Of a stretch of DNA of 64,000 nt, positions 4,737-52,965 are shown piece by piece. How positions within the stretch are numbered: the stretch's first letter is position 1; each line of letters starts with the position of its first letter. The position numbers and the translations under genes are program-made. Under the pieces are notes generated by a model. That model made no database searches. It was not told the DNA's origin and saw nothing but the letters and a program-made list of their open reading frames with translations. This stretch comes from Rebecca billardiae RCC1528 (lineage: Eukaryota; Protista; Haptophyta), in NCBI GenBank assembly GCA_965240325.2, contig OZ251253.1, positions 310,001 through 374,000 of the forward strand. The letters run 5' to 3'.

Positions 4737-4884
4737 GACGAGCGACCCCGGCGCGGCTAACGCCCCGCCCCGCCCGTCGCCGGCCGCCGCGCCGCCGGGA
4801 ACGAGCCGGAAAACCGGATCTCCGCAGGAAGAATGAAAGCAAAAGGGAGGACGGGCGTGATCAAGAACCCGCGTGGCCGCGACG

Positions 4885-7743: not shown

Positions 7744-7874
7744 GATGGCGGCCGAGTGCGCACTCGCGACCGCCAAAAAAAACGCCGGACCGCGTGGCCG
7801 CTTTCAATCCGGGGCGACCGGGACGAAACCCGGCTGGGCAATTGAAAGCTACGCGCGCCAAATCGCCGCGGGCG

Positions 7875-16117: not shown

Positions 16118-19428
<3,311 letters not shown>

Positions 19429-20285
19429 AAGTCGGGAGCGTGGGGGGGATGATGCGGATGCGGTCGCGATTTTTTGCAGTCCGTCGCGTCGGCTCGGGAC
19501 CACTTTCCCGCCGTCGAACCGATGTCAAACTTCGCAGGTCGTGTTCAACTCCCTTGTCGGTATTCCGTACCCCGATGCCCGGCGGAAAAAGACGATTTTG
19601 TTGATGGCCTACGGTTCGTCAATAGCTTGAAGCCGGGCATCTTGTAGGTAGCGTCTGTAGCTGTCGGTAGGTTCCCCCGGTCTGCGACCGCGTTGACCCA
19701 CTGAAGCGGAATCAACGATACATATAATGATCGGCGGAGGGTTCACAACAGATTCGAGGCGAACGTTTAAGCAGCCTATTTTACCGCCGCAAAAGCAATC
19801 AAGCGATGTGTTTGCGCTCGCTTGGTCGCGCACCGTCATGGAAGTATGATTCATTTTTTACTCATGGATCAATCTACGCCTTCTTTCCACCCTTTGAACG
19901 AGTAAGATGCCAGATTAATACGATCGGCCAGTTACAACCCGATCGTGAACTTTTCTCCACCAAAGATACCTGCTGCAATAATCATCACAAACGCCCGCAA
20001 GCAGCGGAAAATTGGTCAAGCGATTTATTTCTCCTCAACCTCGCATAAATTCAGACCTACCCACTCACCGCATGCGCGCCACTCGGCCCCGCCGTTAAAT
20101 TGGTTAAAAAAGAAAGAATGATGATAGCAGTTATTACCCCCATACAACCGGACCCATTCCAGTATGATGCCGAATCCGGCCGCGCGGGGCCGCCGACGAG
20201 GCTGTGCTTGCAAGAGTCCGGCTGCGCGGGGCCCGCCGACGAGTGCGTGCGTGCGGGGCCGGCTTCGCTTGCCAGTCAGTGCGTG

Positions 20286-32692: not shown

Positions 32693-35646
32693 CTACCCCC
32701 AGAGCACGCTCTGCGTCTTGGCCATCTCGCTCTTGACCCGCGCCACGTACTCCGCCTCCGCGCGCTCGATCGCCTGGCGCTCCAACACCTTTGAGTTCGC
32801 CTCGAGCTGCTTCGAAAAGTGCTTGTGCTGCATCTGCGTCTTGAGGTAGGCGGAGTGCTCGAGCTGCCGCTTCTGCTCGTTCTCGCGCTTGATCTGCTCG
32901 AGCTTGTTCACGCGCTCCACCTGGCGGGGCGGGAAGGTAGGGTTGGGGGGTAGGGTTGGGGGGTAGGGTTGGGGGGTAGGGTTGGGGGCGGCAGGCGTGT
33001 GAGTGAGGCCACGCCGCACGTGCGCGCGCGCGTGGCGGCGCCCGCCCGCGCGCTGCGCGCTCACACGTGCGCGCGCGCGGGCGCCAGAGCGCGAGGGAGC
33101 GCGCGCTCCCGGGGCGGCGGCGCGCGTGCGCGCACCTCCCGTTGGATCACGTCCAGCTCCGCGAGGTGGTGCGCGCGCGCGGCCGCGCGGTCCCGCTGCC
33201 TGTCCTCGATTTGCTTCTGCCGCCCTTCCAGCGTCACCTGCAGCAGCTGCTCGCGCGCCGCCTGCTCGCGGCCCCACTCCGCGACGCGCTTGTCCCACGC
33301 CTTGCCTGGCGGCGGGTGAGGGTGAGGGTGAGGGTGAGGGAAGCACGGCGCGCACACACAGAGACAGAGAGAGCACGGCGCACACACACAACGGGGGTTA
33401 GGGTTAGGGTGAGGGTGAGGGTGAGAGGGTTAGGGTGAGGGTGAGGGTGAGAGAAGCACGGCGTGCACACAGCCGCGGGGCCGCTGCATGCGCGCGGCCC
33501 GCCCGCCCGGCCGGGCGGGCAGCTGGGTGCCGCCCAGCCGCGCGCCCGCTCGCCCGGCTGGGAGCCGCCCAGCCGCGCCCGTGCGCGCGCCGCGCCCAGC
33601 CCCCAGCCTTGCGCCCGCGCGCGCGCGCGCCCGGCTCGCGCTCGCACCGAGGTCGGCCTCGCGCGCCTTCTCGAGCTCCGCCTCGTCCGCTGCCTCCTTC
33701 GCCATCAGCAGCTGCAGGTGGCGCTGGTAGGCGAGCGACTCCTGCTTGAGCCGCTCGTGGTGCGCGCGCTCGAGCCGCTCGTCCTCCGCCTCCTTCGACA
33801 AGACGGAGTCCAGCCGGGCTGCGCGGCGGCGCCAGCGGGCCAGGGCGGGGACGGGCGGGGCGGGCGGGCGGCGGGCCGGAGCGGGCGCGGGCGGGCGGGC
33901 GGGGGCGGGCGGGCGGGCGGTGGGGTTGGGTGTTTGGTGTTGGGTTAGGGTACGGGCAGATGTCAGTGTCGCCGTCGGGCGAGGGCGCGGCGCCAGCATG
34001 GTCGCCACCCCGCCCGCGCCGCCCTACTGCCCCCGCGCGCCGCGCGCCGCGCGCCGCGCGCCGCGCGCCGCGCGCCGCACCCTTATCCTCCTCGAGCTCC
34101 TTGGCGTACGCGCGCGCGCGGTCCGAGCGCTTCGCGACGTTGAACGAGTCCAGCTCGAGCTTCGCCGCGTACTGCGCCTTCCGCCGCTCCACCTCCGCCA
34201 CCTCCTGCGCGTCCTTTTCCGCCTGCCACTGCTGCGCCATCAGCTCGGCGGCGCGCTCGCGCTCGGCCGCGTCCGCGTCGCGCAGGGCCTGTTTCTCCGC
34301 GGTCTGGGCGGGTGGCGGTGTGCGCGCGCGGAGGGAGGCGGGGGAGCACGCGTGAGGCGGGGCGGGGCGCGCTCGGCGCCGACGGCTGACGCCGCCGCCG
34401 CCGCCGACACGCGCTGCACGCACGCGCCCACACGGGCGTCCGCACGCGCGGCACGCGGCCGGACCAGCGGCCGGCCGCGCCCGCGCACCCGCCCGCTCGA
34501 TCGCACCGCACCGCACGCCGCCACCCACGCGCGCGCCGGTGGCAGCACGGCTGCGCCACCGCCCCCCGGACTCCGACAGCCCGTCCACCGCCCTCCGGAC
34601 TCCCACAGCCCCACCGCGCCCCCCTGTGACGCGCCGCGCGCTCGCGCCTAGGCCTGTGGCACACCCGGGCCAGTGACACCCCCTCTCTCCCTGCCTGGTG
34701 GCTGCCGCCGGTGCCCGCCCGCCCGCCCGGGGCCACGCCCGCACGCCTGGCCGCCCCGCACACGCCCCCGGGCCCCCGCCTCCCTCGCGCACTTCTCCTC
34801 CTCCCGGACGAGCTCCTCCCACGCTCCTCCCGGATTCCTCCTCCTCCCGGACTCCGCGCGCACCTGTCTGGCGAGGATGCGCATCTGCTCCTCGTCCATC
34901 GCCCTGCGCTGCGCCTCCTCCTCCGCCTCGCGCCGCTCCTTCGCCTCGGCGTCCTTGACCCACATGTCGGCGAAGACCTTCTCCTCCTGCTGCTCCAGCT
35001 CGAGTAGCGCCATCCGCTCCTCGATCTGGTACCCGCGCGCCGCGTCGCACGCCTTGGCGATGTTGGCCGAGTCGGCGTTGCGCAGCGGGTCGCACGACAG
35101 CCGCCATTGCCGGTCGAGCTGCTCCTGCACGTACGTGCGGCGCGTCTCCTCGCGCTTGTTGCGCAGCTCGCGCGCGCGCGACTCCATCCGCTCGCGCCGC
35201 GCCTCCGGGCCCTCGCCCAGCGCCTCGATCTGCCGCTCGAACGCCTCGTCCTCCGCGCGGAGCATCTCGGACAGCTTCCGGCGGCGCTCGATCAGCAGCT
35301 GCTTGTCGGCCGCGCGGATGGAGTCGAAGCGCTGCTGCACGGCGCGGCGGCGGATCACGCCGTCGGTGCGCTGCTCCCACTGCGCGTACGCGCCGCGCTT
35401 GAAGTCCTCCTTCACCGCCTCCGACATCTTGAGCCGCTCGCTCTCCTGCTTGCGCTTCTGCAGCACGATGAAATCCGAGCGGATTCCGCCATGGCCAACC
35501 TGCGCGCCGGGCGGCGGGGCGCGGGGGATGGCGGGGGCGAACGGTGGCGGTGAGGCCCGGGCGGCCTGCGGGCCGCGGCCTCGCGCCGGGCGGGCGGCCA
35601 GGCGCGCGCGGCGACGGGCGGCGAGTGCCGGCGAGCCGCCCACCAT
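32693..35646 (-). CDS. CFAP53: Cilia- and flagella-associated protein 53-like (CCDC11, TPH coiled coil), 6 exons
   Basis: Exons 35646-35644 (ATG only), 35499-34864, 34303-34081, 33818-33648, 33305-33136, 32920-32693, all GT-AG and frame-consistent; ERRRKLSEML..E, RARELRNKREETRR..VQEQLDRQWRLSCDPLR motifs. Confidence 0.8.
32936..33452 (+). repeat. Intronic telomere-like / G-rich repeats (GGGTGA, GGGTTA, GGGGGGTAGGGTT)
   Basis: 32936-32988 four GGTAGGGTTGGGG units; 33314-33340 and 33393-33452 (GGGTGA/GGGTTA)n. Confidence 0.85.
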
Positions 35647-35803
35647 CCTGGCCACAGCTTCGAACGCCCCAATAACCGAACTTTTCGTCCGGACTGCGCA
35701 CCGGCTTCCACCGGACCAAGCCGGGCGGCTGGCGAGGCCGACCTCCACGACGGGCGCGATCGCGGTCGCCGCGCTCTCCTCGCGCCCGGGGGCTCAGCAC
35801 GCC

Positions 35804-38488
35804 ATGAAGCGCACCGGAGAGAGCGACGGCCGCACGCCCGTGTACAATCTGATGCGGATGTTGACGGGCTTCATGCGATCAGCTTCGGCTCCGTCGGCGC
35901 AGCGCGAGCTCGACCTCGGCGGCTCCAGCGCCGACGCTCGCGCTGACGATGCCACCGAGTTGCCGGCGCCGAGCCCGCCCGAGGCGGATGGCGCGAACAA
36001 GAGGGCCAGGCACTCGATGGTGCTCGACTCACGTGACACCGGGCCCGATGGGTCCACTCCATCCCACGTGGATGGCGCGTTGCCCGTCGCGCAGGCTGCT
36101 GCTGCCCTGCGCTGCGACCAGGAGGAGGACGGCGATGACGATGACGCGGAGACGGTGGTCGGAGGCGGGGATGAGCGCGAGGAGCCCGCCGGCATGGGCG
36201 ATGCTTCGCCTTCTGTGTTCCTTGGCGTGCACTACGAGGCAGAGATGGGGCGGTGGCGTGCAAGCGTATGCCACAACGGCAGCCAATACTACGCGCCCGG
36301 AGGCCTGGCAACTGCCGCCGAGGCGGCGCGCGCGTATGACGCGCTCGTGCGCAAGAAGCGCCTCGTGGGCGTGAAGCGGCTCAACTTCCCTTCACCACAC
36401 GAGTACGAGCTCGAGCTGCAGGCCAGCCGCGCCGCGCAGGCCTCGAGCCACGGCTTTGTGGGGATTACCTGCAATTCCAGCCGCCAGACGGGTCCACGAC
36501 CATGGCAGGGAGTTGTCTGTCACAATGGGAAACAGCTTTATGCCGGCAGCCATGCCACGGCGGAGGAGGCCGCGCACGCGTACGATGCACTCGTGCGCAA
36601 GAAGGGCCTGGTGGGCACCAAGCGGCTCAACTTCCCCACGGCTGACGAGCACGACCTCAACGAGCGCTGCACGGTGAACCACAACAGGTGCACCATCACG
36701 GCCGTGCACAGACCAGCAGCAGCGGAGCCCGCCATCGAGCAGCCGCCGCCTTTACGCCGCCCCTCTGCACGCGTGGCTGAGCAGGGGCCCGCTGCTGCTG
36801 CCGGTGCTGCATTGCCATCTGCCTTGCACCAGCAGCTCGCCACGCCGCCCTCCATCGAGCACCCTGCGCCCGCCAGCGCTGGCCTCAGCTCGGCCGCAGG
36901 TGCACACGCAGAGGCGGCTGCTTCTGCGCCTGCGGACACGCTGGCCGGCACACCCGGCGAGAGCGGTGCTGAGCCGCCGCCGCGCCTCGCGACGCTCGAG
37001 GCCAGCGTCGAGCGCCCGTGTGAGCACGTGGGTCACACCGGGCCGCCCGCTCGCAGCGGCGAGACTCCAGATGGGGCCTCGCCCTGCGGCCACGAGGAGG
37101 AGGACGGCGATGACGATGACGCGGAGACGGTGGTCGGAGATGGGGATGAGCGCGAGCAGCCCGCCGGCATGGACGACGTGTCGCCTTCCGACTTCGTTGG
37201 CGTGTGCTACGCTGCAAAGAGGGGGCGATGGGGTGCACAAGTGGTGCACAAGGGCGTCAAACACCACGCGCCCGGACGCCTGGCGACTGCCGCCGAGGCG
37301 GCGCGTGCGTACGACGCGCTCGTGCGTGAGAAGGGCCTCGTCGGCGTGAAGCGTCTCAACTTCCCGTCCTCGCACGAGCGCGAGCTCGAGCTGCAGGCCA
37401 GCCACGCCGCACATGCCTCGAGCCACGGCTTTGTGGGAGTTTCCTGTAGCTCAGGGTCTGGCACTCCACGACCGTGGCAGGGATTTGCCCGTCACAACGG
37501 GAAGCGACTTTGCACCGGCAGATATGCCACAGCGGAGGAGGCCGCGCGCGCGTTCGACGCGCTCGTGCGTGAGCTTCACCTGGTGGGCATCAGGCGGCTC
37601 AACTTCCCCACGCCGGACGAGCGCGACCTCAACGAGCGCTGCCCGGTGCGATCCAACAGGTGCACTATCACGGCCGTGCACAGACCAGCAGCAGCGGAGC
37701 CCGCCTCCGAGCAGCCGCCGCCTTCACGCCGCCCTTCTGCACTCGCGGCTGAGCAGGGCCCGGCCGCTGCCGTCGACGCCACACAGCCAGCTGCCTTGCA
37801 CCAGCAGCAGCCCGCCATGCCGCCCTCCGCCGAGCACCCGTCGCCCTCCAGCGCTGGCGTCGGCTCGGCAGCAGCTGCGCGCGCGGAGGCGGCTGCTTCT
37901 GCGCCCGCTGACACGGCGGCCGGCACAGCCGGTGAGAGCGGTGCTGAGCCGCCGCCGCTCCTCGCGACGCTCCAGACCAGCGCCGAGCACCCTTACCCAC
38001 ATGCCGCTCACATCGTGCCGCCCGCTCACAGCGGTGAGACCCCCGAGGCTGCTGCTGCGGTGCAGATGATCGTCGAGCTGAAGATGCAGCTGCACACGCG
38101 CACGTGTTTAGTCAAGCGGCTGCAGGCCGAGCTGCGCGGCGTGCGCGCGCGGCTGCAGGCGGCCGAGCACGTGGCGGAGCACGTGGCGGACCCTGCGCGC
38201 GTGCGCGTGCTGCGGCAGGTGCTGAGGGCCGAGGTGGCGGGCGCTGGCTCCAGGTGCGCTGGAGCTCGCCCATGCCGCGCCGCCCACGCATGCGCGCGCG
38301 GTGCGACTGTTGCGCCAGCCAGCAGCCCCGCACGCCCCACCAGCTCTCTCACTTGGTACTGACCCAGTCCACACCCCACCTCCCCTGACTGCCGGCGCAG
38401 CACTGACGCCGACGGGTCGGCATCGCGTGCGCAGGCGCAGCTCGAGTACACGCGCACGCTCGAGAGCCAGCTGCTGCGTCACGGATGA
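35804..38488 (+). CDS. AP2-domain array copy 1 (four AP2 domains + C-terminal coiled coil)
   Basis: Four F.GV...W.A...ATAxEAARAYD...RLNFP domains; intron 38254-38400 gives terminal exon STDADGSASRAQAQLEYTRTLESQLLRHG*. Confidence 0.88.
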
Positions 38489-39167
38489 GGCTCACTCACT
38501 CAGTCACAGCGTTGCTATATATACGTTATGCGCAGCAGTTTACAAAGCTCATATATTAGCGCGTCGGAAACTCGTCGCAGCTTCTGAGTCAGTAGTTGAT
38601 GTCCGGCGGACTCGGACGGACTCAGGGACTGCGAAGCTGAGGGCGAGGCGCATGCGCGGGCCCCGCCCCCGGGGCCGGGGCCGCGGTGCGGCCGGATGCC
38701 GGTGAGGTGGGCCGCCTGTCACCTGCTGCCGATGCTTTCACTTTCAGGAGACTCCCCGCGGTCCCAGTGGCCACGGGGGCTGACGGGGCGAGCCGCGTGA
38801 CTGTAAGGCTGCGGCAACATCGCGGATCTGACCGCCTGCGCGCGGTGCGCAGTATTAGCATCATCACAACGAGCTGAGACAATCATCTTATTATTATTGC
38901 TGTGCATCAGATCGGCGGCATGGTCTGAACAACCGTTGCTACTTTTGACGATGAACCCAGCAAGGTTGGATACGGCGAGGCGCAAGGGTCGCAAGGCTGC
39001 CCACCCATACGCTGCCGAGGTCAAGGTGCGCCCGGTGGTGAGTGACGCCATCAATGACCGGCATTGCAGACAATGAGCGGTGCGATTTGCTCTTGATGAA
39101 TCCCGGATCGCGGTTCAGTGCTTTCCGGATCGGCGGGACGTTCGCCGCGCTCTCCTCTCAGCACGCC

Positions 39168-40911
39168 ATGCAGCGCGCCGCAGAAAGCGACAGCCGCGCG
39201 CCCCCGTCCAGTCTGATGCGGATGGCGACGGCTGGGGCTCCTTCGGCGCCGCGCGAGCTCGACCCTGGCGGCTCCAACGCTGACGGTGCCGCGGACTTGC
39301 CGGCGCCAACCGTGCCCGAGGCTGCTGGTGCGAACAAGAAGGCCAGGCACTCGATGGAACTCGAGTCGCGTGGCGGCCGGACCAAAGGGGCCAGCGCGGT
39401 GCACGCGCTGCTCGCCGCGCAAGCTGCCCAGTGGGTGGCGTCTGGCACGACCGACGCACGGCCGCGTGATGGGGCCTCGCCCTGCAACCGTCAGACGGAC
39501 GGAGATGGCGATGCCGTGGAGACGGTGCTTGGAGGCGGGGATGAGCGCGCGCAGCCCGCCGGCATGGACGAAGTGTCGCGTTCGGACTTCTTGGGCGTGT
39601 ACTATAATGCAGCTGCGGGGTGGTGGTCTGCAATAGCCACTCACAAGCGCTGCAGATACCGCGCACCTGGACGCCAGGCGACTGCCGCCGAGGCTGCGCG
39701 CGCGTACGACGCGCTCGTGCGCAAGAAGGGCCTCGTTGGCGTGAAGCGTCTCAACTTCCCGTCCCCGCACGAGTACGAGCTCGAGCTGCAGGCCAGCCGC
39801 GCTGCGCAGGCCAGCCGTGCTGCGCAGGCCTCGAGCCACGGCTTTGTGGGGATTCGCTGTGATTCCAGCAGCAAGGCCGGTCCACGAACATGGCGAGGAT
39901 TTGTCTGTCACAACGGGGAGCAACTTTTCACCGGCACATATGCCACGGCGGAGGAGGCCGCGCACGCGAACGATGCACTCGTGCGCAAGAAGGGCCTGGT
40001 GGGCACCAAGCGGCTCAACTTCCCCACTCCGGACGAGCGCGACCTCAACGAGCGCTGCGTGACACGCAAATACACGAGCGTGGCCGCGCAGAGGCCAGCA
40101 GCAGCGGAGCCCGCCATCGAGCAGCCGCCGCCTTCACGCCGCCCCTCTGCACGCGCGGTGGAGCAAGGCCCAGCCGCTGCTGTCGATGCGGTGCAGCCAG
40201 CGCCCAAGCACGCGCAGCTCGCCATGCCGCCCCCCAGCGAGCACCAGGTGCCGGCCAGTGCTGGCCTCAGCTCGGCCGCAGGTGCACACGCGGAGGCGGC
40301 TGATTCTGCGCCTGCGGACACGCTGGCCGGCACAGCCGGCGAGAGCGGTGCTGAGCCGCCGCCGCTCCTCGCGACGCTCGTGACGAGCGTCGAGCACCCT
40401 TGCCCGCACGACGCTGTCAGCTGGCCGCCTGCTCGCAGCGGCGAGACTCCCGAGGCTGCCGCTGCGGTGGAGATGATCGTCGAGCTGAAGATGCAGCTGC
40501 ATGCGCGCGAGTGTTTAGTCGAGCGGCTGCAGGCCGAGCTGCGCGGCGTGCGCGCGCGGCTGCAGGCGACCGAGCGCGTGGTGGAGCACGTGGCGGACCC
40601 TGCGCGTGTGCGCGTGCTACGCCAGGTACTGAGCGCCGAGGTGGCGGGCGCTGGCTGCAGGTGCGCTGCAGCTCGCCCCATGCCGCGCCGCCCCACGCAT
40701 GCGCGCGCCGTGCGATTGTTGCACCAGCCAGCAGCCCAGCGTATTACACCAAGCTCCTCTCTCACTCTGTACAGTGTACTGACCCAGTCCACACCCCACC
40801 TCCCCTGGCTGCCGGTGCAGCAGCACCAACGTCGACGGGCTTGCATCTCGTGCGCACGCACAGCTCGAGTACACGCGCTCGCTCGAGAGCCAACTTCTGC
40901 GTCACGGATGA
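39168..40911 (+). CDS. AP2-domain array copy 2 (two AP2 domains + coiled coil)
   Basis: Same CAGCACGCC-ATG start context, two AP2 domains, intron from 40661 to 40820/40823, terminal LRHG*. Confidence 0.85.
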
Positions 40912-41327
40912 GTCTCGGTCAAGCGGCGGCACCCAGTCGGCCGACCACGTGTCATCGGAAGAGGCGGGCGACTAAGCTGCTTCGCATCGGCCCGGATGCG
41001 CGTCCGGGAGGCTCGCCAGACGAGGAGTCGCCGCTATTGATCAGCGCGCTGTGGTCTGACGTACTGCTATTTGTAGCCGTGGCGACGTAGCCAGCAAGGT
41101 ATTGGACGGTGGGGCGCAAGGCGGTTCGCGCGAGCGAGGCCACTGCACACACGTCAGTCATTGCTGTCCCGGTCGAGATTGCTCTATGGGGGTACCGGAT
41201 TCCCGGTGTACAGTGGCACCTGTATTCATGGCTTCATGCAAATCCGGAATTCCGAGACGGGCGCCTCCGGACACATTCATGGGCGCTGGCGCGCTGCGCT
41301 CGCCTCACGCCCGAGGCTCAGCACGCC

Positions 41328-43046
41328 ATGAAGCGCGCCGGAGAGAGTGGCAGCCACCCGCCCACGTCCAGTTGGGTGCGGGCGGTTACACCCCCGGCTT
41401 CGTTGGCACCGCGCGAGCTCGACCCCGGCGGCTCCAACGCTGACGGTGCCGCGGACTTGCCGGCGCCGAGCGTGCCCGAGGCTGAAGGCGCGAACAAGAG
41501 GGCCAGGCACTCGATGGGGCTCGAGTCGCGTGGCGGCCGGACCAAAGGGGCCAGCGCAGTGCACGCGCTGCTCGCCGTGCAAGCTGCCCAGCGGGTGGCG
41601 TCTGGCTCGACCGACGCACGGCCGCGTGATGGGGCCTCGCCCTGCAACCGTCAGACGGACGGAGATGGCGATGCCGTGGAGACGGTGCTTGGAGGCGGGG
41701 ATGAGTGCGGGCAGCCCGCCGGCATGGACGATGCGTCGCGTTCGGACTTCTTGGGCGTGTACTACCATGCAGCTGCGGGGCGGTGGTCTGCAATAGCCAC
41801 TCACAAGCGCCGCAGATACTGCGCACCTGGACGCCAGGCGACTGCCGCCGAGGCGGCGCGCGCGTACGACGCGCTCGTGCGCGAGAATGGCCTCGTCGGC
41901 GTGAAGCGTCTCAACTTCCCGTCCCCGCACGAGCGCGAGCTCGAGCTGCAGGCCAGCCGCGCTGCGCAGGCCTCGAGCCACGGCTTTGTGGGGATTCGCT
42001 GTAATTCCAGCAGCCACGCGGGTGCACGGCCGTGGAAAGGACTTGTCTGTCACAACGGGAGGCAGCTTCATGCCGGCAGCCATGCCACGGCGGAGGAGGC
42101 CGCGCACGCGTACGATGCACTCGTGCGCGAGTACCTCCTGGTGGGGACCAAGCGGCTCAACTTCCCCACGCCGGACGAGCGCGACCTCAACGAGCGCTGC
42201 GTGACACGCAAATACACGAGCGTGGCCGCGCACAGACCAGCAGCAGCGGAGCCCACCATCGAGCAGCCGCCGCCTTCACGCCGCCCCTCTGCACGCGCGG
42301 CGGAGCAAGGCCCAGCCGCTGCCGCTGTTGCAGTGCAGCCAGCGCCCAAGCACGCGCAGCTTGCCACGCCGCCCTCCACCGAGCACCCTGCGCCCTCCAG
42401 CGCTGGCCTCGGCTCGGCAGCAGGTGCGCGTGAGGAGGCGGGTGCGCCGCCTGTTCTCGCGGACACGCTGGCCGTCACAGCCGGTGAGAGCGGTGTTGAG
42501 CCGCCGCCGCTCCTCGCGACGCTCGTGACGAGCGTCGAGCACCCTTGCCCACACGTCGCTCCCAACGGGCCGCCCGCTCGCAGCGGCGAGACTCCCGAGG
42601 CTGCCGCTGCGGTTGAGACGATCGTCGAGCTGAAGATGCAGCTGCATGCGCGCAAGAGTTTAGTCGAGCGGCTGCAGGCCGAGCTGCGCGGCGTGCGCGC
42701 ACGGCTGCAGGCGGCCGAGCACGTGGCGGAGCACGTGGCTGACCCTGTGCGCGTGCGCGTGCTGCGGCAGGTGCTGAGCGCCGAGGCGGCGGGCGCTGGC
42801 TCCAGGTGCGCCGCAGCTCGCCCAGGCCGCGCCGCCCCACGCATGCGCGCGCGGTGCAACTGTTGCGCCAGCCAGCAGCCCAGCACGCTGCACAGCCTCT
42901 CTCACGTGGTCCTGACCCAGTCCGCACCCCACCCGTCCCCTGACTGCCGGCGCAGCAGCACTGACGCCGACGGGCCAGCATCGCGCGCACATGCGCAGCT
43001 CGTGTACACGCGCACGCTCGAGCACCAGCTTCTGCGTCACGGATGA
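41328..43046 (+). CDS. AP2-domain array copy 3
   Basis: Two AP2 domains + MQLHARKSLVERLQAELRGVRARLQ coiled coil; homologous intron is in frame and stop-free. Confidence 0.85.
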   Translation: MKRAGESGSHPPTSSWVRAVTPPASLAPRELDPGGSNADGAADLPAPSVPEAEGANKRARHSMGLESRGGRTKGASAVHALLAVQAAQRVASGSTDARPRDGASPCNRQTDGDGDAVETVLGGGDECGQPAGMDDASRSDFLGVYYHAAAGRWSAIATHKRRRYCAPGRQATAAEAARAYDALVRENGLVGVKRLNFPSPHERELELQASRAAQASSHGFVGIRCNSSSHAGARPWKGLVCHNGRQLHAGSHATAEEAAHAYDALVREYLLVGTKRLNFPTPDERDLNERCVTRKYTSVAAHRPAAAEPTIEQPPPSRRPSARAAEQGPAAAAVAVQPAPKHAQLATPPSTEHPAPSSAGLGSAAGAREEAGAPPVLADTLAVTAGESGVEPPPLLATLVTSVEHPCPHVAPNGPPARSGETPEAAAAVETIVELKMQLHARKSLVERLQAELRGVRARLQAAEHVAEHVADPVRVRVLRQVLSAEAAGAGSRCAAARPGRAAPRMRARCNCCASQQPSTLHSLSHVVLTQSAPHPSPDCRRSSTDADGPASRAHAQLVYTRTLEHQLLRHG

Positions 43047-43492
43047 GTCTTATCGAAGCTTAGCGGAAAAGTAGCTGCTGCGCATGCCGGCCCCGCCGTG
43101 ATTCCGGGAGGCTCGTCTGGCGAGGAGTCACTGCTGCTATATAGTATATTGATCCGTGGCGTCGGGTCTGGCGTACTGTACTACTGACACTATTGGTCAC
43201 GACCGCCTTGACGATGCCGAATATAGCGATGCGCTGTACGCCAGCAAGATGGTTCAGTCGCCAGGCCGACCTCGGGGCTGGCGGCTACCTGCGTCACTGC
43301 CAACAGTGCGACACTGGTGTTGCCTCATCAAAGCCGGATACAGCGCCCGACAGCGGTTCCGGAATCCTCCATTCTGGTTTGAGTGGTTTCTGGGTCAGTG
43401 CGTCCGGATTTCCGGGCGAACCGAAACCCGCACGGCCGCTGCGGTGGGACGGTCGGCGCGTCGCGGTCGCTGCGTTCTCCTCTCAGCACGCC

Positions 43493-45205
43493 ATGAAGCG
43501 CGCCGGAGAGAGCGACAGCCGCGCGCCCGCGTCCGGTCTGATGCGGATAGTGACGTTTCCGGCTCAGTTGGCGCCGCGCGAGCTCGACCCCAGCGGCTCC
43601 AACGCTGACGGTGCCGCGGACTTGCCGGCGCCAACCGTGCCCGAGGCTGCTGGCGCGAACAAGAGGGCCAGGCACTCAACGGTGCTCGAGTCGCGTGGCG
43701 GCCGGACCAAAGGGGCCAGCGCAGTGCATGCGCTGCTCGCCGCACGAGTTGCCCAGCGGATGGCGTCTGGCTCGACCGACGCCCGGCCGCCAGATGGGGC
43801 CTCGCAGACGGACGGAGATGGCGATGCCGTGGAGACGGTGGTTGGAGGTGGGGCTGGGCGCGGGCAGCCCGCCGGCATGGGCGATGCATCGCCGTCTGCG
43901 TTCAATGGCGTGTACTACGATGTAACGAATGGGCGGTGGCGTGCACGCGTAGCTCACAAGGGCGTCCGATACGCCGCGCCCGGATTTATTGCGACTGCCG
44001 CCGAGGCGGCACACGCGTACGACGCGCTCGTGCGCGAGAACGGCCTCGTCGGCGTGAAGCGTCTCAACTTCCCGTCCTCACACGAGCGCGAGCTCGAGCT
44101 GCGGGCCAGCCGCGCTGCGCAGGCCTCGAGCCACGGCTTTGTGGGGATTCGCTGTAATTCCAGCAGCCACGCGGGTGCACGGCCGTGGAAAGGACTTGTC
44201 TGTCACAACGGGAGGCAGCTTCATGCCGGCAGCCATGCCACGGCGGAGGAGGCCGCGCACGCGTACGATGCACTCGTGCGCAAGAAGGGCCTGGTGGGCA
44301 CCAAGCGGCTCAACTTTCCCACTCCGGACGAGCGCGACCTCAACGAGTGCTGCGTGACACGCAAATACACGAGCGTGGCCGCGCAGAGGCCAGCAGCAGC
44401 GGAGCCCTTCATCGAGCAGCCGCCGCCTTCACGCCGCCCCTCTGCACGCGCGGCGGAGCAAGGCCCAGCCGCTGCTGTCGATGCGGTGCAGCCAGCGCCC
44501 AAGCACGCACAGCTCGCCATGCCGCCCCCCCGCGAGCACCAGTTGCCGGCAAGTGCCGGCCTCAGCTCGGCAGCAGGTGCGCGTGCGGAGGCGGCTGCTT
44601 CTGCGCCTGCGGACACGCTGGCCGGCACACCCGGCGAGAGCGGTGCTGAGCTGCCGCCGCTCCTCGCGACGCTCGTGGCCAGCGTCGAGCACCCTTGCCC
44701 GCACGACGCTGTCAGCTGGCCGCCTGCTCGCAGCGGCGAGACTCCCGAAGCTGCCGCTGCTGTGGAGATGATCGTCGAGCTGAAGATGCAGCTGCATGCG
44801 CGCACGTGTTTAGTCAAGCGGCTGCAGGCCGAGCTGCGCGGCGTGCACGCGCGGCTGCAGGCGGCCGAGCGCGTGGCGGAGCACGTGACGGACCCTGCGC
44901 GCGTGCGCGTGCTGCGGCAGGTGCTGAGCGCCGAGGTGGCGGGCGCTGGCTCCAGGTGCGCTGCAGCTCGCCCAGGCCGCGCCGCCCCACGCATGCGCGC
45001 GCCGTGTGACTGTTGCGCAAGCCTGCAGCCCAGCGTATTACACCAAGCTCCTCTCTCACTCTGTACAGTGTACTGACCCAGTCCACACCCCACCTCCCCT
45101 GGCTGCCGGTGCAGCAGCACCAACGTCGACGGGCCTGCATCTCGTGCGCACGCACAGCTCGAGTACACGCGCTCGCTCGAGAGCCAACTTCTGCGTCACG
45201 GATGA
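43493..45205 (+). CDS. AP2-domain array copy 4
   Basis: Two AP2 domains + coiled coil + homologous intron and terminal exon. Confidence 0.85.
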
Positions 45206-45621
45206 GTCTCGGTCAAGCGGCGGCACCCAGTCGGCCGACCACGTGTCATCGGAAGAGGCGGGCGACTAAGCTGCTTCGCATCGGCCCGGATGCGCGTCCG
45301 GGAGGCTCGCCAGACGAGGAGTCGCCGCTATTGATCAGCGCGCTGTGGTCTGACGTACTGCTATTTGTAGCCGTGGCGACGTAGCCAGCAAGGTATTGGA
45401 CGGTGGGGCGCAAGGCGGTTCGCGCGAGCGAGGCCACTGCACACACGTCAGTCATTGCTGTCCCGGTCGAGATTGCTCTATGGGGGTACCGGATTCCCGG
45501 TGTACAGTGGCACCTGTATTCATGGCTTCATGCAAATCCGGAATTCCGAGACGGGCGCCTCCGGACACATTCATGGGCGCTGGCGCGCTGCGCTCGCCTC
45601 ACGCCCGAGGCTCAGCACGCC

Positions 45622-47342
45622 ATGAAGCGCGCCGGAGAGAGTGGCAGCCACCCGCCCACGTCCAGTTGGGTGCGGGCGGTTACACCCCCGGCTTCGTTGG
45701 CACCGCGCGAGCTCGACCCCGGCGGCTCCAACGCTGACGGTGCCGCGGACTTGCCGGCGCCGAGCGTGCCCGAGGCTGAAGGCGCGAACAAGAGGGCCAG
45801 GCACTCGATGGGGCTCGAGTCGCGTGGCGGCCGGACCAAAGGGGCCAGCGCAGTGCACGCGCTGCTCGCCGTGCAAGCTGCCCAGCGGGTGGCGTCTGGC
45901 TCGACCGACGCTCGGCCGCGTGATGGGGCCTTGCCCTGCGACCGTCAGACGGACGGAGATGGCGATGCCGTGGAGACGGTGCTTGGAGGCGGGGCTGAGC
46001 GCGAGCAGCCCGCCGGCATGGACGATTCATCACCTTCTGAGTTCATGGGCGTGCACTACGATGTAAAGGCGGCGCGGTGGTATGCAAAAGTACAGCACAA
46101 GGGCGACATCTTCTACGCGCCCGGAGGCCGGGCAACTGCCGCCGAGGCGGCACACGCGTACGACGCGCTCGTGCGCGAGAACGGCCTCGTCGGCGTGAAG
46201 CGGCTCAACTTCCCGTCCTCGCACGAGCGCGAGCTCGAGCTGCAGGCCGGTCGCGCCGCACAGGCCTCGAGCCACGGCTTTGTGGGGATTTCCTGTAATT
46301 CCAGCAGCCAGGCGGGTCCACGACCATGGCAGGGACTTGTCTGTCACAAGGGGAAGCGTGTACGTACCGGCGGCTACGCCACGGCGGAGGAGGCCGCGCG
46401 CGCGTACGACGCGGTCGTGCGTGAGCATTGCCTGGTGGGCATCAAGCGGCTCAACTTCCCCACGGCGGACGAGCGCGACCTCAACGAGCGCTGCCAGGTG
46501 CGATCCAACAGGTGCACCATCACGGCCGCGCACAGACCAGCAGCAGCGGAGCCCGCCTCCGAGCAGCCGCCGCCTTCACGCCGCCCTTCTGCACGCGCGG
46601 TGGAGCAAGGCCCAACCACTGCTGCGGTTGCGGTGCAGCCAGCTCCTGCGCACGCGCAGCTCGCCACGCCGCCCTCCACCGAGCACCCGGCGCCGGCCAG
46701 CGCTGGGCTCAGCTCGGCAGCAGGTGCGCGTGCGCAGGCGGGTGCACCGCCTGTGCCCGCGGACACGCTGGCCGACACACCCGGTGAGAGCGGTGCTGAG
46801 CCGCCGCCGCTCCTCGCAACGCTTGTGACCAGCGCCGAGCACCCTTGCCCACACGACTGCCACGCCGTGCTGCCCGCTCGCAGCAGCGAGACTCCCGAGG
46901 CTGCTGCTGCTGTGGAGGCGATCGTCGAGCTGAAGATGCAGCTGCATGCGTGCACGTGTTTAGTCGAGCGGCTGCAGGCCGAGCTGCGCGGCGTGCGCGC
47001 GCGGCTGCAGGCGACCGAGCGCGTGGCGGAGCACGTGGCGGACCCTGCGCGCGTGCGCGTGCTACGCCAGGTGCTGAGCGCCGAGGTGGCGGGCGCTGGC
47101 TCCAGGTGCGCTGCAGCTCGCCTATGCCGCGCCGCCCACGCATGCGCGCGCCGTGTGACTGTTGCGCCAGCGATCAGCCCAGCACGCTCCACCAGCTCTC
47201 TCTCACTTGGTGCTGAGCCAGTCCACACCCCACCCCCCCTGACTGCCTGCGCAGCAGAACCGACGCTGACGAACCGGCATCATGTGCTCAGGAGCAGCTC
47301 GAGTACACGCGCACGCTCGAGAGCCAGCTGCTGCGCGGATGA
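45622..47342 (+). CDS. AP2-domain array copy 5
   Basis: Two AP2 domains + coiled coil; terminal exon ...LEYTRTLESQLLRG* ends at 47342. Confidence 0.85.
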
Positions 47343-47579
47343 GCCATGAGGAATCAGCGAAGCTCATCAGCAAAGAAGCTAATGGCAATGCCGTGCTTCC
47401 GGGACGAGGCTCGGGCGAGGAGTCACTGACTACACTGCGGTTGATCAGCGGAGCTGTCTGAAGTACCTGCTGCCTTCTGTAGCAGACTCTTCTGTAGCCT
47501 TGATGGCGAGGAGGCTGCCGCCAGCAAGTGAATGAGCAGTAGGTTCGGAAAGTGCCAGGTGGAGGCTGCGGTGATGTGC

Positions 47580-48159
47580 GGAGCGTTGCGCCAGCTGGAC
47601 AAACGCGAAGGACCCAAGACCCAGGATCCTTGGACTTGTGGAGGGCCCCGGCGAGACCTGCACTCGGATCGGGGCCCTCTCCCGCTGTGCCGCTTGCGGC
47701 GCACGCCTGACCGGTGCGGCGGGCGACGTGTGCGCACGCCGTGCAGCTCGCGGCGCGTGCGCGTTGGCTAGATGGCACACGTCTCCCGACGCACACGTCG
47801 AATGACCGCAGCTGGGATGCCCTTTCGCGCCGCAAGGACGCTTGCGAGTCCGGTCGCGCGGCCGAGCGGCGTGGCCGTGCCGCCTGCACGCAGTGCGCCC
47901 ATGGACTTGGCTTCGCCGCGCGCGCTGAGGCTGGCGAGCGTCACGGCCGAATTCTACGACGCGTGCGACGCGCCATCTGCCTGCTTCCTTGCCTCCGACG
48001 CACGTTTTCTGCGGGCAGCGGCGACTCGCCCGCCCATGCCTGTGCGGCGGCGAGCCGCCATCCACCGCGCTTCGCCCTAAACAGAGCGCGGAACATTTCG
48101 TTTTGAAAAGCGCAGATCTGAAAAGGCCGAGGGCGTTTGTCCAGCTGGCGCAACGCCCC
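47580..48159. mobile_element. MITE-like non-autonomous TIR element (~580 bp) in the spacer between AP2 copies 5 and 6
   Basis: Perfect 24-bp inverted repeat GCGTTGCGCCAGCTGGACAAACGC at 47583-47606 and 48133-48156; its size accounts for the longer copy 5-6 period. Confidence 0.75.
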
Positions 48160-48332
48160 TGATGCCCGTTGCTCATCTCGGTTCGGTGCTGCTGCTGTCC
48201 GGATTCGGGATTTCCGCCAATAAATAATGCGGCCACAACCGGACGCAATCCGCATGGGCGCTTGAAGCGGACTGGGGCGGTCGGCGCGATCTCGGTCGCC
48301 GCCTTTCTCCTCGCGCCCGCCCTCAGCACGCC

Positions 48333-50071
48333 ACGAAGCGCACCGGAGAGGGTGACTACCGCGCGCCTGCGTCCAGTCAGATGTTGGCTTCGACTTCGGC
48401 TCCGTCGGCGCCGCGTGAGCTTGACCCCGGCGGCTCCAACGCTGCCGATGCCGCCGACTTGCCGCCGACAACTGTGCCCGAGGCTGCTGGCGCGAACAAG
48501 AAGGCCAGGCACTCGATGGTGCTCGAGGCACGTGGTTGCTGGCACACAGGTGCCAGCGCAGTCCACGCGCTGCTCGCCGCACAAGCTTCTCAGCCGGTTG
48601 CTGATGCTGAGACGACCGACGCACGGCCGCCAGACGGGGCCTCGCCCTGCAAGCAGGAGGAGGAGGACCGCGAGGAGTCGGAGGACGAGAACGCGGAGAC
48701 GGTGGTTGGAGGCTGGGCTGGAAGCGGGCAGCTCGCCGGCATGGGCACCGTGTCGCGTTCCGATTGTTTTGGCGTGCACTATCAGGCAAGGATGGGGCGA
48801 TGGTATGCACACGTAAGTCACAAGGGTGGGCGATACTCCGCGCCCAGAGGCCTGGCGACTGCCGCTGAGGCGGCACGCGCGTACGACACGCTCGTGCGCG
48901 AGAACGGCCTCGTCGGCGTGAAGCGTCTCAACTTCCCGTCTTCGCACGAGCGCGAGCTCGAGCTGCAGGCCGGTCGCGCCGCGCAGGCCTCGAGCCACGG
49001 CTTTGTGGGGATTTCCTGTAATTCTGGCCGCCAGGCGGTTTCACGACCATGGCGAGGAGTTGTCTGTCACAAGAGAAAGCAGCTTTACACCGGCACATAT
49101 GCCACGGCGGAGGAGGCCGCGCACGCGTACGATGCGCTTGTGCGGAAGAAGCGCCTCGTGGGCACCAAGCGGCTCAACTTCCCCACGCCGGACGAGCTCG
49201 ACCTCAACGAGCGCTGCGTGACACACAAGTACACGAGCGTGGCCGCGCAGAGACCAGCGGCAGCGGAGCCCGCCATCGAGCAGCCGCCGCCTTCACGCCG
49301 CCCCTCTGCACGCGCGGCGGAGCAAGGCCCAGCCGCTGCCGCTGTTGCGGTGCAGCCAGCTCGTGCGCACGCGCAGCTCGCCACGCCGCCCTCCATTGAG
49401 CACCCTGCGCGTGCCAGCGCTGGCCTCAGCTCGGCCGCAGGTGCGCGTGCGCAGGCGGCTACACCGCCTATGCCCGCGGACACGCTGGCCGTCACTGCCG
49501 GCGAGAGCGGCGTGGGACCGCCGCCGCTCCTCGCGACGCTCGTGACGAGCGCCGAGCACCCTTGCCCATCCGACGCCCACACAGCGCCGCCAGCTTGCAC
49601 GGAGGAGACTGCCTAGCTAGGCTGCCGCTGCGGTGGAGATGATCGTCGAGCTGAAGATGCAGCTGCATGCGCGCACGAGTTTAGTCGAGCGGCTGCAGGC
49701 CGAGCTGCGCGGCGTGCGCGCGCGGCCGCAGGCGGCCGAGCGCGTGGCGGAGCACGTGGCGGACCCTGCGCGCGTGCGCGTGCTGCGGCAGGTGCTGAGT
49801 GCTGAGATGGCGGGCGCTGGCTCCAGGTGTGCTGCAGCTCGCCCCATGCCGCGCCACCACCCAGCATGCATCTGCACTACGCACCAACACCGCGCCAGCC
49901 AGTGCGCTGCACCCGTGTCGCCTCGGTTTGGCACTGACCCAGCCCACACCCCACCTCCCCTGACTGCCGGCGCAGCAGCACTGACGCTGACGGGCCAGCA
50001 TTGCGTGCGCAAGGCGCAGCTCGAGTGCGGCGCCGCGCGCTCACGAGAGCCACCTGCTCAGCGGACGATGA
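48333..50071 (+). pseudogene. AP2-domain array copy 6, disrupted or truncated
   Basis: Start ATG changed to ACG at 48333 (next in-frame ATG 48381); 4-bp CTAG-type insertion near 49613 gives a stop at 49616 and a frameshift before the coiled coil; both AP2 domains intact. Confidence 0.8.
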
Positions 50072-50897
50072 GAATCGTCGCATCAGTGAAGTGGCTGAGT
50101 GGTAGCCCACTGCCGCATGTAGTGGAGATCAGATCTGTAGGACCGCAGGGCACCCTTTTCTATAGGCTCTCTCTTCATGTGCACCATCCCGCCGTACAGT
50201 ACCGGCGCCGGTGTGACACTGCCAGGCCGTGCCTGAGCCACGACATCTGTCATCGCCAGCCTGTGTGGTGCCTCAGGCGCCGGGGATGGGGGCTTACACG
50301 CGCCCGGGGATCGACCATGGTACATACCGACCTGCCAGGCCTACACAATCGACACGTGCGTGTCCGTCACGCCCGCGCACGCACTTTAGTTGGCGGTGGG
50401 CGGCAAGCGGCCGGCCGCCATAAAGACTGGCCGCGGCAGAGAGCCTCGATGGAGGCCGTTTTGAACGCGCTCGCGCGCGGCGAGGTGAGCCGTGCAGGGT
50501 TGTTCGGCGCTGTGGGCGCCTCGAGGGCGTCAAGGTAGACCGCGCCCAAGCGGCTGTCGCCCCCTGGATCGGCCTCTCCGCGCCGTGCGAGGCCACGGCG
50601 CGCGGGCGGTACACGACCTCCTGTCTGACGGCCGAAGGTCCGAGTGGTCAGCCCCCAGTGCGTTTCTCCAGCGGCGCACGCCAGCCTGACGGGCGGCCGG
50701 CGGCCCCGCGTTTCCGCAAAAGCGCGAAAATCTTTTTTTGCGTCGATTTCACGGTAGGCGACCACTCGGACCTGGCGCAGTCAGGAACAAGCTACAGTTT
50801 ACTAAGAATAAGAGACGCACACAGCTCAGGCAGGCGAATGAGAGAGCCGCCGAAGCGGCCAGTCTTTATGCGGCCAAAGCGTGCCCATGTTCATCAC

Positions 50898-52927: not shown

Positions 52928-52965
52928 GTTCATCACGCTTTCGGACGTCGGTGGTGCATGCAGCA

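What the first reader, a model, noticed from the sequence alone, without database searches (positions are those of the whole stretch)
35804..50071. Tandem array of six AP2 + coiled-coil genes: candidate rapidly evolving DNA-recognition repertoire
Seen: six head-to-tail paralogs (starts 35804, 39168, 41328, 43493, 45622, 48333; period mostly ~2.13-2.17 kb) with 14 AP2 domains. Each copy has an NLS-like NKRARH/NKKARH, an AP2-A/AP2-B pair, a Pro/Ala linker and a strongly conserved ~60-aa coiled coil (IVELKMQLHARxxLVERLQAELRGVRARLQ...DPARVRVLRQVL) followed by a small spliced terminal exon. Known: AP2 is a sequence-specific DNA-binding domain. Inference: variable DNA readers fused to a constant effector/oligomerisation module, evolving by birth and death in a transposon-rich neighbourhood, is the architecture of KRAB-zinc-finger clusters. 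This could be a convergent AP2-based system for transposon/virus surveillance or another genetic conflict. The function is not shown by the sequence.
Basis: partly seen in the sequence, partly recalled or inferred. Interest (0 to 1): 0.9.

Follow-up and report, generated by a model that had tools for sequence, protein, structure and literature searches.

The report
Tandem array of double-AP2 genes
A marine alga carries six neighbouring copies of a DNA-binding regulator gene. The copies keep each other nearly identical except on the DNA-touching surface of one domain, which differs from copy to copy, so they probably read different DNA sequences; nothing here shows that they police transposons.

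Summary
Six head-to-tail paralogs lie on the + strand at 35804-50105, with seven AP2 pairs (14 AP2 domains), a KRAR-type basic patch, a Pro/Ala linker, a predicted 48-residue helix with heptad periodicity, and a small spliced last exon. Copies are 80-90% identical, far more diverged than the 0.33% separating this assembly from independent reads of the same species, so this is not an assembly artefact.

Copy 1 is an in-frame fusion of two units (four AP2 domains). Copy 6 is decaying: start ATG is now ACG, a 4-bp insertion creates a TAG before the helix, and the last exon is frameshifted.

The genes are mosaics made by gene conversion, including an 887-bp block identical bar one base. Promoter, N-terminus, linker and helix are homogenised (helix dS 0.08). 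The AP2 beta-sheets keep old divergence (dS 0.34). On the DNA-facing positions of AP2-A, dN/dS is about 2.6, against 0.23 on the core-facing positions.

Best reading: a lineage-specific family of dimerising double-AP2 transcription factors with diversified DNA specificity. The comparison with KRAB zinc-finger clusters fits the evolutionary pattern only. The neighbourhood holds ordinary genes, the constant module has no known relatives, and no targets are known. Expression could not be tested.

The scan's unchecked notes list a second six-gene double-AP2 array about 8 kb beyond this window.

The parts
35804..38488 (+). Copy 1: fused gene with two AP2 pairs (four AP2 domains), about 845 aa. Exon 1 is 35804-38253, the intron about 38254-38400, and the stop ends at 38488. 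The junction of the two fused units is near 37070-37100; the first unit lost its helix and the second lost its N-terminus.
39168..40911 (+). Copy 2, 527 aa. Exon 1 is 39168-40660, the intron 40661-40820, the last exon runs to 40911.
41328..43046 (+). Copy 3, 522 aa. Exon 1 is 41328-42805, the intron 42806-42955, the last exon runs to 43046. It is a mosaic: promoter and N-terminus match copy 5, AP2-A matches copy 2, AP2-B matches copy 4.
43493..45205 (+). Copy 4, 517 aa. Exon 1 is 43493-44955, the intron 44956-45114, the last exon runs to 45205.
45622..47342 (+). Copy 5, 523 aa. Exon 1 is 45622-47105, the intron 47106-47254, the last exon runs to 47342.
48333..50105 (+). Copy 6, decaying. The ancestral start is ACG (48333-48335), with the next in-frame ATG at 48381. 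The AP2 pair is intact. A 4-bp insertion gives a TAG at 49614-49616 and a frameshift before the helix module (49633 onward). The last exon (from about 49976) is frameshifted.
41745..41837 (+). AP2-A beta-sheet of copy 3, the hypervariable DNA-facing segment. The equivalents are 36215-36307, 37190-37282, 39585-39677, 43898-43990, 46039-46131 and 48762-48854.
41979..42083 (+). AP2-B beta-sheet of copy 3, moderately variable. The equivalents are 36449-36553, 37424-37525, 39837-39941, 44132-44236, 46273-46377 and 48996-49100.
42591..42785 (+). Conserved helical (leucine-zipper-like) module of copy 3. The equivalents are 38039-38233, 40446-40640, 44741-44935, 46891-47085 and about 49633-49826.
40731..41617 (+). 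887-bp block identical, bar one base, to 45025-45911 (offset 4294). It covers the 3' end of copy 2/4, the intergenic promoter and the N-terminal coding part of copy 3/5, and marks a very recent conversion or duplication tract.
45025..45911 (+). Partner of the 887-bp near-identical block.

Best explanation
The array is a lineage-specific tandem family of nuclear DNA-binding proteins, most likely transcription factors.

Architecture of each protein, in order:
- a KRAR-type basic patch, a likely nuclear localisation signal;
- an acidic stretch, a possible activation region;
- two divergent AP2/ERF domains about 84 residues apart;
- a disordered Pro/Ala linker;
- a roughly 40-residue heptad helix plus a short second helix, likely a dimerisation module.

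How it evolves: the array grew by tandem duplication and unequal crossing-over. Copy 1 is an in-frame fusion of two units, and copies 2-3 and 4-5 are a duplicated two-gene unit. Frequent gene conversion homogenises promoters, N-termini, linkers and the helix. The DNA-facing residues of the AP2-A beta-sheet stay different between copies and have accumulated an excess of amino-acid replacements.

Likely consequence: a small repertoire of paralogs with different DNA specificities but an interchangeable dimerisation interface, able to pair with each other and so place up to four AP2 domains on DNA in different combinations. Copy 6 is being lost.

Shown here: the array, the domain folds, the mosaic structure, the substitution pattern and the lesions. 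Inferred: nuclear localisation, DNA binding, different specificities, dimerisation and transcriptional role.
For: Array and copy structure.

AP2 fold: the AlphaFold model of the copy 3 pair has mean pLDDT 84.3, with a three-strand sheet plus helix twice. The best PDB matches are WRINKLED1 double-AP2 on DNA, TEM1 and AtERF1. A profile of these pairs matches WRI1 across both domains at E 4.9e-38.

Selection is heterogeneous, which argues for functional proteins. The AP2-A helix has dN/dS 0.18 and the AP2-A sheet 1.19. Minimum replacement:silent changes are 99:24 in the sheets against 19:21 in the helices (Fisher p 1.6e-4). DNA-face positions give dN/dS 2.63 against 0.23 for core-face positions. 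The variable columns align with AtERF1 positions R150, E160, R162, R170 and W172.

Concerted evolution: nearest-neighbour identity switches along each gene. An 887-bp block is identical bar one base. dS is 0.08 in the helix module against 0.34 in the sheets.

Helix module: a 48-residue helix with pLDDT up to 98. Nine of 12 a/d positions are hydrophobic; 41 of 2000 shuffles reach the observed score.

Intact genes: ORFs of about 520 codons in five copies, conserved splice sites and a uniform spliced C-terminus.

Lineage-specific amplification: in the domain tree the window's A and B domains form their own clades, nested among domains of same-species proteins. Picozoa, Cymbomonas and others amplified AP2 independently. 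A large AP2 expansion in the haptophyte E. huxleyi (157 genes, 33% of its transcription factors) is published (PMC4827209).
Against: - There is no expression evidence: no sequencing runs were listed, so the intron and the transcripts are inferred.
- dN/dS outside the sheets is fairly high (about 0.5-0.6). GC3 (0.78-0.79) is lower than in neighbouring genes (0.84-0.92). Both are compatible with weak constraint or low expression.
- The canonical Arg/Trp DNA contacts of plant AP2 are mostly replaced, and Pfam scores are below cut-off in five of six copies, so DNA binding itself is not shown.
- The dN/dS estimates pool non-independent pairs, cover few codons, ignore recombination, and use a DNA-face set chosen after seeing the alignment.
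- No array protein, and no fragment of one, appears in the protein collections, although other proteins of the same species do.
Confidence: 0.7

Rival explanations
1. One reading: an AP2-based counterpart of KRAB zinc-finger clusters. The variable AP2 readers recognise transposons or viruses, and the constant C-terminal module recruits a silencing complex, in an arms race.
For: The evolutionary pattern matches: a tandem cluster, an excess of replacements at DNA-facing residues, a constant module, and gain and loss of copies. Unchecked scan notes report AP2 fused to SET methyltransferases elsewhere in this genome and a second array nearby.
Against: No transposon domains were found in about 50 kb of flanks; there is only one TIR element. 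The constant module has no detectable relative or known co-repressor motif. An acidic N-terminal stretch suggests activation. The same pattern (clusters with diversified DNA contacts) also fits ordinary regulatory diversification, and plant ERF genes are commonly in tandem (PMC6752658, listed). No target data exist.
Confidence: 0.08
2. A young, weakly constrained or decaying duplicate family: the copies are largely redundant or non-functional, and the variable sheets reflect relaxed constraint rather than selection for new specificities.
For: Overall dN/dS is 0.5-0.9 in most regions. GC3 is lower than in the neighbours. Copy 6 carries three lesions. There is no expression evidence, and Pfam scores are sub-threshold.
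Against: Five copies keep ORFs of about 520 codons; the chance of no stop at this base composition is roughly 5e-5 per copy (my own estimate from 70% GC). The copies also keep their splice sites and a common stop. The core-facing and helix residues are under clear purifying selection (dN/dS 0.18-0.23), while adjacent exposed residues exceed 1. Uniform relaxation would not produce that alternation.
Confidence: 0.12
3. The genes are cargo of a mobile element or an integrated virus, or the array is an assembly artefact (collapsed or expanded repeat, or haplotypes placed in tandem).
For: AP2 domains occur in mobile elements and viruses (established knowledge). A TIR element lies just downstream. 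One 887-bp block is near-identical between units.
Against: Base composition matches the flanks. No transposase, integrase or viral genes are present, and the IMG/VR scan found no relatives. Copies differ by 10-20%, whereas independent reads of the species differ from this assembly by 0.33%. Each copy also has its own AP2-A sequence, so these are neither haplotypes nor a collapsed repeat.
Confidence: 0.04

Closest known systems
Plant AP2-subfamily double-AP2 factors (WRINKLED1, APETALA2, ANT); structure 7wq5
   Same: Two AP2 domains in one chain at similar spacing. The profile of these pairs aligns to WRI1 over both domains (E 4.9e-38). WRI1 is also the best structural match.
   Different: The canonical Arg/Trp contact residues and the YRG element are replaced. 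There is an insertion in the first loop of AP2-B. No plant-type linker motif was seen. There is a C-terminal heptad helix that plant members lack. In the domain tree, A and B group with domains of the same species rather than forming ancient R1/R2 lineages (plant sequences were not included).
Tandem ERF/DREB clusters of land plants (for example 35 of 91 ERF genes in tandem in Fragaria vesca, PMC6752658)
   Same: AP2-family transcription factors amplified by local tandem duplication, with divergence among duplicates.
   Different: Those are single-AP2 genes with conserved DNA-contact residues and usually similar motifs. Here the proteins are double-AP2, the contact face is hypervariable, and the rest is homogenised by gene conversion.
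AP2 expansion in the haptophyte Emiliania huxleyi (58 multi-AP2 plus 99 single-AP2 genes, PMC4827209)
   Same: A GC-rich marine alga with a lineage-specific AP2 expansion that includes multi-AP2 proteins. An E. huxleyi protein is among the better hits (P0007).
   Different: The best hits share only the AP2 region at 25-37% identity. The array structure, the helix module and the substitution pattern have not been described there, as far as the searched library shows.
KRAB zinc-finger gene clusters of tetrapods
   Same: Tandem clusters, diversification at DNA-contacting residues, a constant non-DNA-binding module, and gene gain and loss.
   Different: Unrelated folds. There is no evidence of a repressor function, of transposon targets or of a transposon-rich setting. 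The constant module here is kept uniform largely by gene conversion.
ApiAP2 proteins of Apicomplexa
   Same: Protist AP2 proteins with divergent contact residues, often several AP2 domains, and DNA-dependent dimerisation in at least one solved case (established knowledge).
   Different: No ACDC domain or other ApiAP2-associated domain was found. ApiAP2 genes are dispersed and mostly one-to-one orthologs, not tandem arrays.

Membership tests
AP2/ERF DNA-binding domain superfamily (PF00847) | Significant match to a sequence profile of the family | tested here: met
   Pfam AP2 reaches its cut-off only in copy 1 (56.4 bits) and is sub-threshold or absent in the others. A profile of these pairs plus 53 homologues matches WRI1 at E 4.9e-38, TEM1 at 9.5e-15 and AtERF1 at about 2e-11.
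AP2/ERF DNA-binding domain superfamily (PF00847) | Fold: three-stranded antiparallel sheet packed on one helix | tested here: met
   In the AlphaFold model both domains are three strands plus a helix, with pLDDT 94-97 in the cores. Foldseek gives probability 1.00 to WRI1 and TEM1, and AtERF1 aligns with TM 0.69 and rmsd 2.7.
AP2/ERF DNA-binding domain superfamily (PF00847) | Conserved Arg/Trp base contacts on the sheet, and demonstrated DNA binding | tested here: not met
   The AtERF1 contact positions align with variable, mostly non-Arg/Trp residues. DNA binding itself cannot be tested with these tools.
Plant AP2 subfamily (double AP2, R1-linker-R2) | Two AP2 domains joined by the conserved plant linker, orthologous to R1 and R2 | tested here: inconclusive
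   Two domains are present at comparable spacing and align to WRI1 over both. However, A and B cluster with same-species domains, and no plant sequences were placed in the tree.
KRAB-zinc-finger-like surveillance cluster (functional analogy) | Tandem paralog cluster with gain and loss of copies | tested here: met
   Six copies, one fusion and one decaying copy.
KRAB-zinc-finger-like surveillance cluster (functional analogy) | Excess amino-acid replacement at DNA-contacting positions | tested here: met
   The AP2-A DNA face has dN/dS 2.63 against 0.23 for the core face. AP2-B shows no excess. The caveats are few codons, pooled pairs and recombination.
KRAB-zinc-finger-like surveillance cluster (functional analogy) | Constant domain that recruits a silencing co-repressor | not testable with these tools
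   A constant helical module exists. It has no Pfam family and no relatives in 1.8 billion proteins.
KRAB-zinc-finger-like surveillance cluster (functional analogy) | Targets are transposons or viruses; the cluster sits among transposons | tested here: not met
   The flanks hold cellular genes: mitochondrial carrier, ankyrin, MFS transporter, hydrolase, aldo-keto reductase, dynein light chain, homeodomain and glycosyltransferase. Only one TIR element is present. The targets themselves cannot be tested.
Coiled-coil / leucine-zipper dimerisation module | Long helix with hydrophobic a/d heptad positions | tested here: met
   A 48-residue helix with pLDDT up to 98. Nine of 12 a/d positions are hydrophobic; 41 of 2000 shuffles reach the score. 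Dimer formation was not tested.

The most novel reading that the evidence does not exclude
The array, together with the second one reported just beyond the window, is an adaptive DNA-recognition repertoire. Gene conversion shuffles AP2-A, AP2-B and linker cassettes among paralogs while keeping a common dimerisation helix. Selection favours new DNA-contact surfaces because the targets themselves evolve: transposons, integrated viruses or other selfish DNA of this alga. That would be an AP2-based, convergent counterpart of KRAB zinc-finger clusters, outside animals.
Probability: 0.08. Interest if true: 0.85.

Novelty: new variant of a known kind. Interest (0 to 1): 0.55.

Why it matters
AP2 proteins are the dominant transcription-factor family in several protist lineages, but how their DNA specificities diversify is little studied outside plants and Apicomplexa. 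This locus shows the process compactly. Cassette-like mosaic genes have their scaffold and dimerisation helix homogenised by conversion, while the DNA-facing residues of one domain diverge faster than silent sites.

If the paralogs bind different motifs and heterodimerise, the array would be a natural system for mapping AP2 residue-to-base recognition rules and for studying combinatorial regulation in marine algae. If the targets turn out to be selfish DNA, it would be a convergent analogue of animal KRAB zinc-finger clusters.

Tried and rejected
- Word-indexed protein search with the whole of copy 3 gave nothing. It was probably swamped by Ala/Pro-rich words, so I treat it as uninformative.
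- The exhaustive profile search found 1141 AP2 proteins, but none matched the N-terminus, linker or helix.
- Two sequencing-run searches (copy 3 and the mitochondrial carrier gene) listed no runs. Read laying was therefore never used, and expression, splicing and copy number remain untested.
- Scans of JGI metagenomes with the protein profile and with an exact 26-nt helix pattern found no relatives. The IMG/VR scan with the protein profile found none either.
- The organism could not be named. The nearest carrier protein outside the same-species Logan runs ERR14847148 and ERR14847151 is only about 52% identical. The Atlas look-ups were not informative. An earlier follow-up note calls it a marine alga.
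- The transposon-rich neighbourhood was rejected after Pfam scans of 29 flanking ORFs.
- Haplotype or assembly artefact was rejected on divergence: 10-20% between copies against 0.33% between data sets.
- An EAR-like repression motif (DLNE after AP2-B) was considered, but it lacks the DLNxxP form and I make no claim from it.
- No formal codon site model was run, because no such program was available and recombination would bias it.


Full report
**1. What is there**

The window is about 70% G+C throughout and comes from a eukaryote. An earlier follow-up note in this scan calls it a marine alga.

Self-comparison shows a head-to-tail array on the + strand between about 35.8 and 50.1 kb, with pairwise nucleotide identities of 80-90%. 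A tblastn search with copy 3 finds exactly the six genes and no other AP2-like fragment in the 64 kb.

Protein alignments give a common architecture:
- an N-terminal region with an invariant GANK(R/K)ARHS basic patch;
- an acidic stretch (DGDGDAVETV...GGGDE);
- AP2-A;
- a short helical spacer;
- AP2-B;
- a Pro/Ala-rich linker of about 125 residues;
- a strongly conserved helical module.

Copy 1 contains two AP2 pairs in one 1229-codon open frame. The junction replaces the helix module of the first unit with the acidic stretch of the second, so it is an in-frame fusion by unequal crossing-over.

**2. Gene models**

Downstream of the helix module all copies share a CAG|GTGCG donor and a pyrimidine-rich tract with CTGAC motifs ending in AG. 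The intervening sequence is about 144-160 nt and differs among copies by lengths that are not multiples of three.

After splicing, copies 1-5 converge on one C-terminus (...QLEYTRTLESQLLRHG*...LLRG* in copy 5). Nucleotide conservation collapses immediately after that stop. This supports the 'small spliced terminal exon' without RNA data. Predicted products are about 845, 527, 522, 517 and 523 residues.

Copy 6 is damaged in three places:
- the ancestral ATG is ACG at 48333, with an in-frame ATG 16 codons later;
- a 4-bp insertion creates a TAG at 49614-49616 and shifts the frame just before the helix module;
- the last exon is frameshifted.

**3. Are the domains AP2?**

Pfam's AP2 model passes its curated threshold only in copy 1 and is weak or absent in the others.

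An exhaustive profile search of 1.84 billion representative proteins returned 1141 hits at E up to 0.001. The best-scoring stretches of the 150 listed hits all lie within profile positions 101-368, almost all on the AP2 pair. The best hits come from Picozoa, the prasinophyte Cymbomonas, Emiliania huxleyi and marine metagenomes. Of the 150 listed hits, 147 carry two or more AP2 domains.

A profile of the window's pairs plus 53 such homologues matches the double-AP2 plant factor WRINKLED1 across both domains at E 4.9e-38, and also TEM1, ERF096 and AtERF1.

The AlphaFold model of the copy 3 pair has mean pLDDT 84.3, with domain cores at 94-97. It shows two three-strand-plus-helix units. Its best PDB matches are WRI1 on DNA, TEM1 and AtERF1. 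Both domains are therefore divergent but genuine AP2 folds.

**4. The constant module**

A 26-nt stretch of the module is present exactly once per gene without mismatch. AlphaFold predicts a 48-residue helix with pLDDT up to 98, followed after Asp-Pro by a second, 17-residue helix.

The long helix has 5.5 heptads with hydrophobic residues at nine of 12 a/d positions; 41 of 2000 shuffles reach the same score. A coiled-coil or leucine-zipper-like dimerisation role is the natural inference, but it is not shown.

No protein in the exhaustive search matched this module, the N-terminus or the linker. Scans of JGI metagenomes and IMG/VR also found nothing. The module is so far unique to this genome.

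**5. How the array evolves**

Copies 2-3 and 4-5 form a duplicated two-gene unit (90.5% identity over 3.9 kb), but identity along it is strikingly uneven. It is 100% over about 0.85 kb, spanning the 3' end of copy 2/4, the intergenic region and the N-terminal coding part of copy 3/5. Exactly, 40731-41617 equals 45025-45911 bar one base. Identity falls to 68-83% over the AP2 sheets.

A sliding nearest-neighbour analysis shows every gene to be a mosaic. Copy 3, for example, is closest to:
- copy 5 at the promoter and N-terminus (100%);
- copy 2 at AP2-A (95-98%);
- copy 4 at AP2-B (96-100%);
- copies 2, 5 and 6 in turn along the linker;
- copies 1b, 4 and 6 in the helix module.

This is recurrent gene conversion or unequal exchange among paralogs.

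Region-wise Nei-Gojobori estimates pooled over all pairs:

| Region | dN | dS | dN/dS |
|---|---|---|---|
| AP2-A sheet | 0.40 | 0.34 | 1.19 |
| AP2-A helix and tail | 0.035 | 0.20 | 0.18 |
| AP2-B sheet | - | 0.34 | 0.63 |
| Pro/Ala linker | - | - | 0.54 |
| Helix module | - | 0.08 | - |

Two conclusions follow.

First, the constancy of the C-terminal module (and of promoters and N-termini) is largely concerted evolution. The sheets hold older divergence that conversion has not erased.

Second, within the sheets the replacements are not random. Columns alternate between invariant and hypervariable (up to six residues among seven sequences).

In the profile alignment to AtERF1, the hypervariable columns correspond to, or sit next to, the positions known from the AtERF1-GCC-box structure to contact bases: R150, R152, W154, E160, R162, R170 and W172. 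That residue list is from my knowledge of that structure; the letters at those positions agree with the printed alignment.

Taking the outward-facing strand positions as one class and the inward-facing ones as another, AP2-A gives dN/dS 2.63 against 0.23. AP2-B shows no excess (0.55 against 0.76).

Minimum replacement:silent change counts are 99:24 in the sheets against 19:21 in the helices (Fisher p 1.6e-4).

Caveats: few codons, pooled non-independent pairs, recombination, and site classes defined after seeing the alignment.

**6. Context**

Pfam scans of 29 flanking ORFs find ordinary cellular genes and no transposase, reverse transcriptase or integrase. The genes found are:
- a mitochondrial carrier;
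- ankyrin and ankyrin-MYND proteins;
- an EF-hand protein;
- an MFS transporter;
- a CRAL/TRIO protein;
- an alpha/beta hydrolase;
- a dynein light chain;
- an aldo-keto reductase;
- a homeodomain protein;
- a GT64/GT1 glycosyltransferase;
- a dual-specificity phosphatase.

The only repeat besides the array is a pair of 388-bp inverted repeats at 50931-51318 and 52503-52890, just downstream. The 'transposon-rich neighbourhood' is therefore not supported in this window.

The array's G+C equals that of the flanks. Its GC3 (0.78-0.79) is lower than in neighbouring genes (0.84-0.92).

**7. Independent data**

A Logan contig from run ERR14847151 is 99.67% identical to window 3596-5715. The same runs carry more distant AP2 paralogs (P0003, P0004), whose domains group with the window's in the domain tree.

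Within-species divergence of about 0.3% against 10-20% between copies rules out haplotypes placed in tandem or a collapsed repeat. The array's own proteins are absent from the collections, and no run could be listed. Expression and copy number therefore remain untested.

**8. Interpretation**

The best-supported reading is a lineage-specific family of dimerising double-AP2 transcription factors. Their scaffold is homogenised, and the AP2-A recognition surface is diversified, probably by selection.

Because the helix is interchangeable, paralogs could heterodimerise. The copy 1 fusion, with four AP2 domains in one chain, is at least compatible with a functional unit of four AP2 domains.

Large AP2 expansions in a GC-rich marine alga are already published for E. 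huxleyi (PMC4827209), and tandem ERF clusters are common in plants (for example PMC6752658). The kind is therefore known. Three features look new against the library searched: the fusion to a private heptad helix, the cassette-like mosaicism, and the excess of replacements on the DNA face.

The KRAB zinc-finger analogy describes the evolutionary pattern well. As a statement of function (transposon or virus surveillance) it has no evidence here, and I rate it at about 8%.

Unchecked notes of this scan report a second six-gene double-AP2 array about 8 kb beyond the window's end and further diverging AP2 duplicates elsewhere in the genome. I could not read those sequences.

Noticed in passing
window 50931-51318 and 52503-52890: A pair of 388-bp inverted repeats, 94.6% identical and about 1.2 kb apart, lies immediately downstream of the array. 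The right arm overlaps the start of the GT64/GT1 glycosyltransferase ORF (52525-55461). A scan note calls it a Mutator-like element with a 9-bp target duplication.
   Followed up: partly
window 32936-32988 and 33314-33453: Interstitial telomere-like repeats, (GGTAGGGTTGGGG)x4 and (GGGTGA/GGGTTA)n, lie about 2.4 kb upstream of the array, next to long GC-rich microsatellites (33022-33920).
   Followed up: no
window 34648-35748 (- strand): A Glu/Arg/Lys-rich, coiled-coil-like protein with no Pfam family is encoded divergently from copy 1. The ORF as listed leaves 55 bp to the copy 1 start codon.
   Followed up: no
window 3596-5715; locus L004: Logan contigs of runs ERR14847148 and ERR14847151 belong to the same species (99.67% identity). 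They hold other AP2 paralogs (P0003, P0004) but no gene call from this array.
   Followed up: partly
window 7794-11735 (+ strand): A very GC-rich stretch (about 80%) holds a 1313-codon open frame with sugar-transporter and MFS matches only in parts. It is probably a multi-exon transporter gene read through its introns.
   Followed up: no
window 18712-19524 (- strand): A homeodomain protein gene (Pfam Homeodomain, E 1.9e-17), so another transcription factor lies in the same window.
   Followed up: no
window 41655-42233 (copy 3) and equivalents: A short DLNE motif follows AP2-B (ERDLNERC), and ELEL follows AP2-A. Both sit in predicted helices. The resemblance to plant EAR repression motifs is only superficial.
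   Followed up: no
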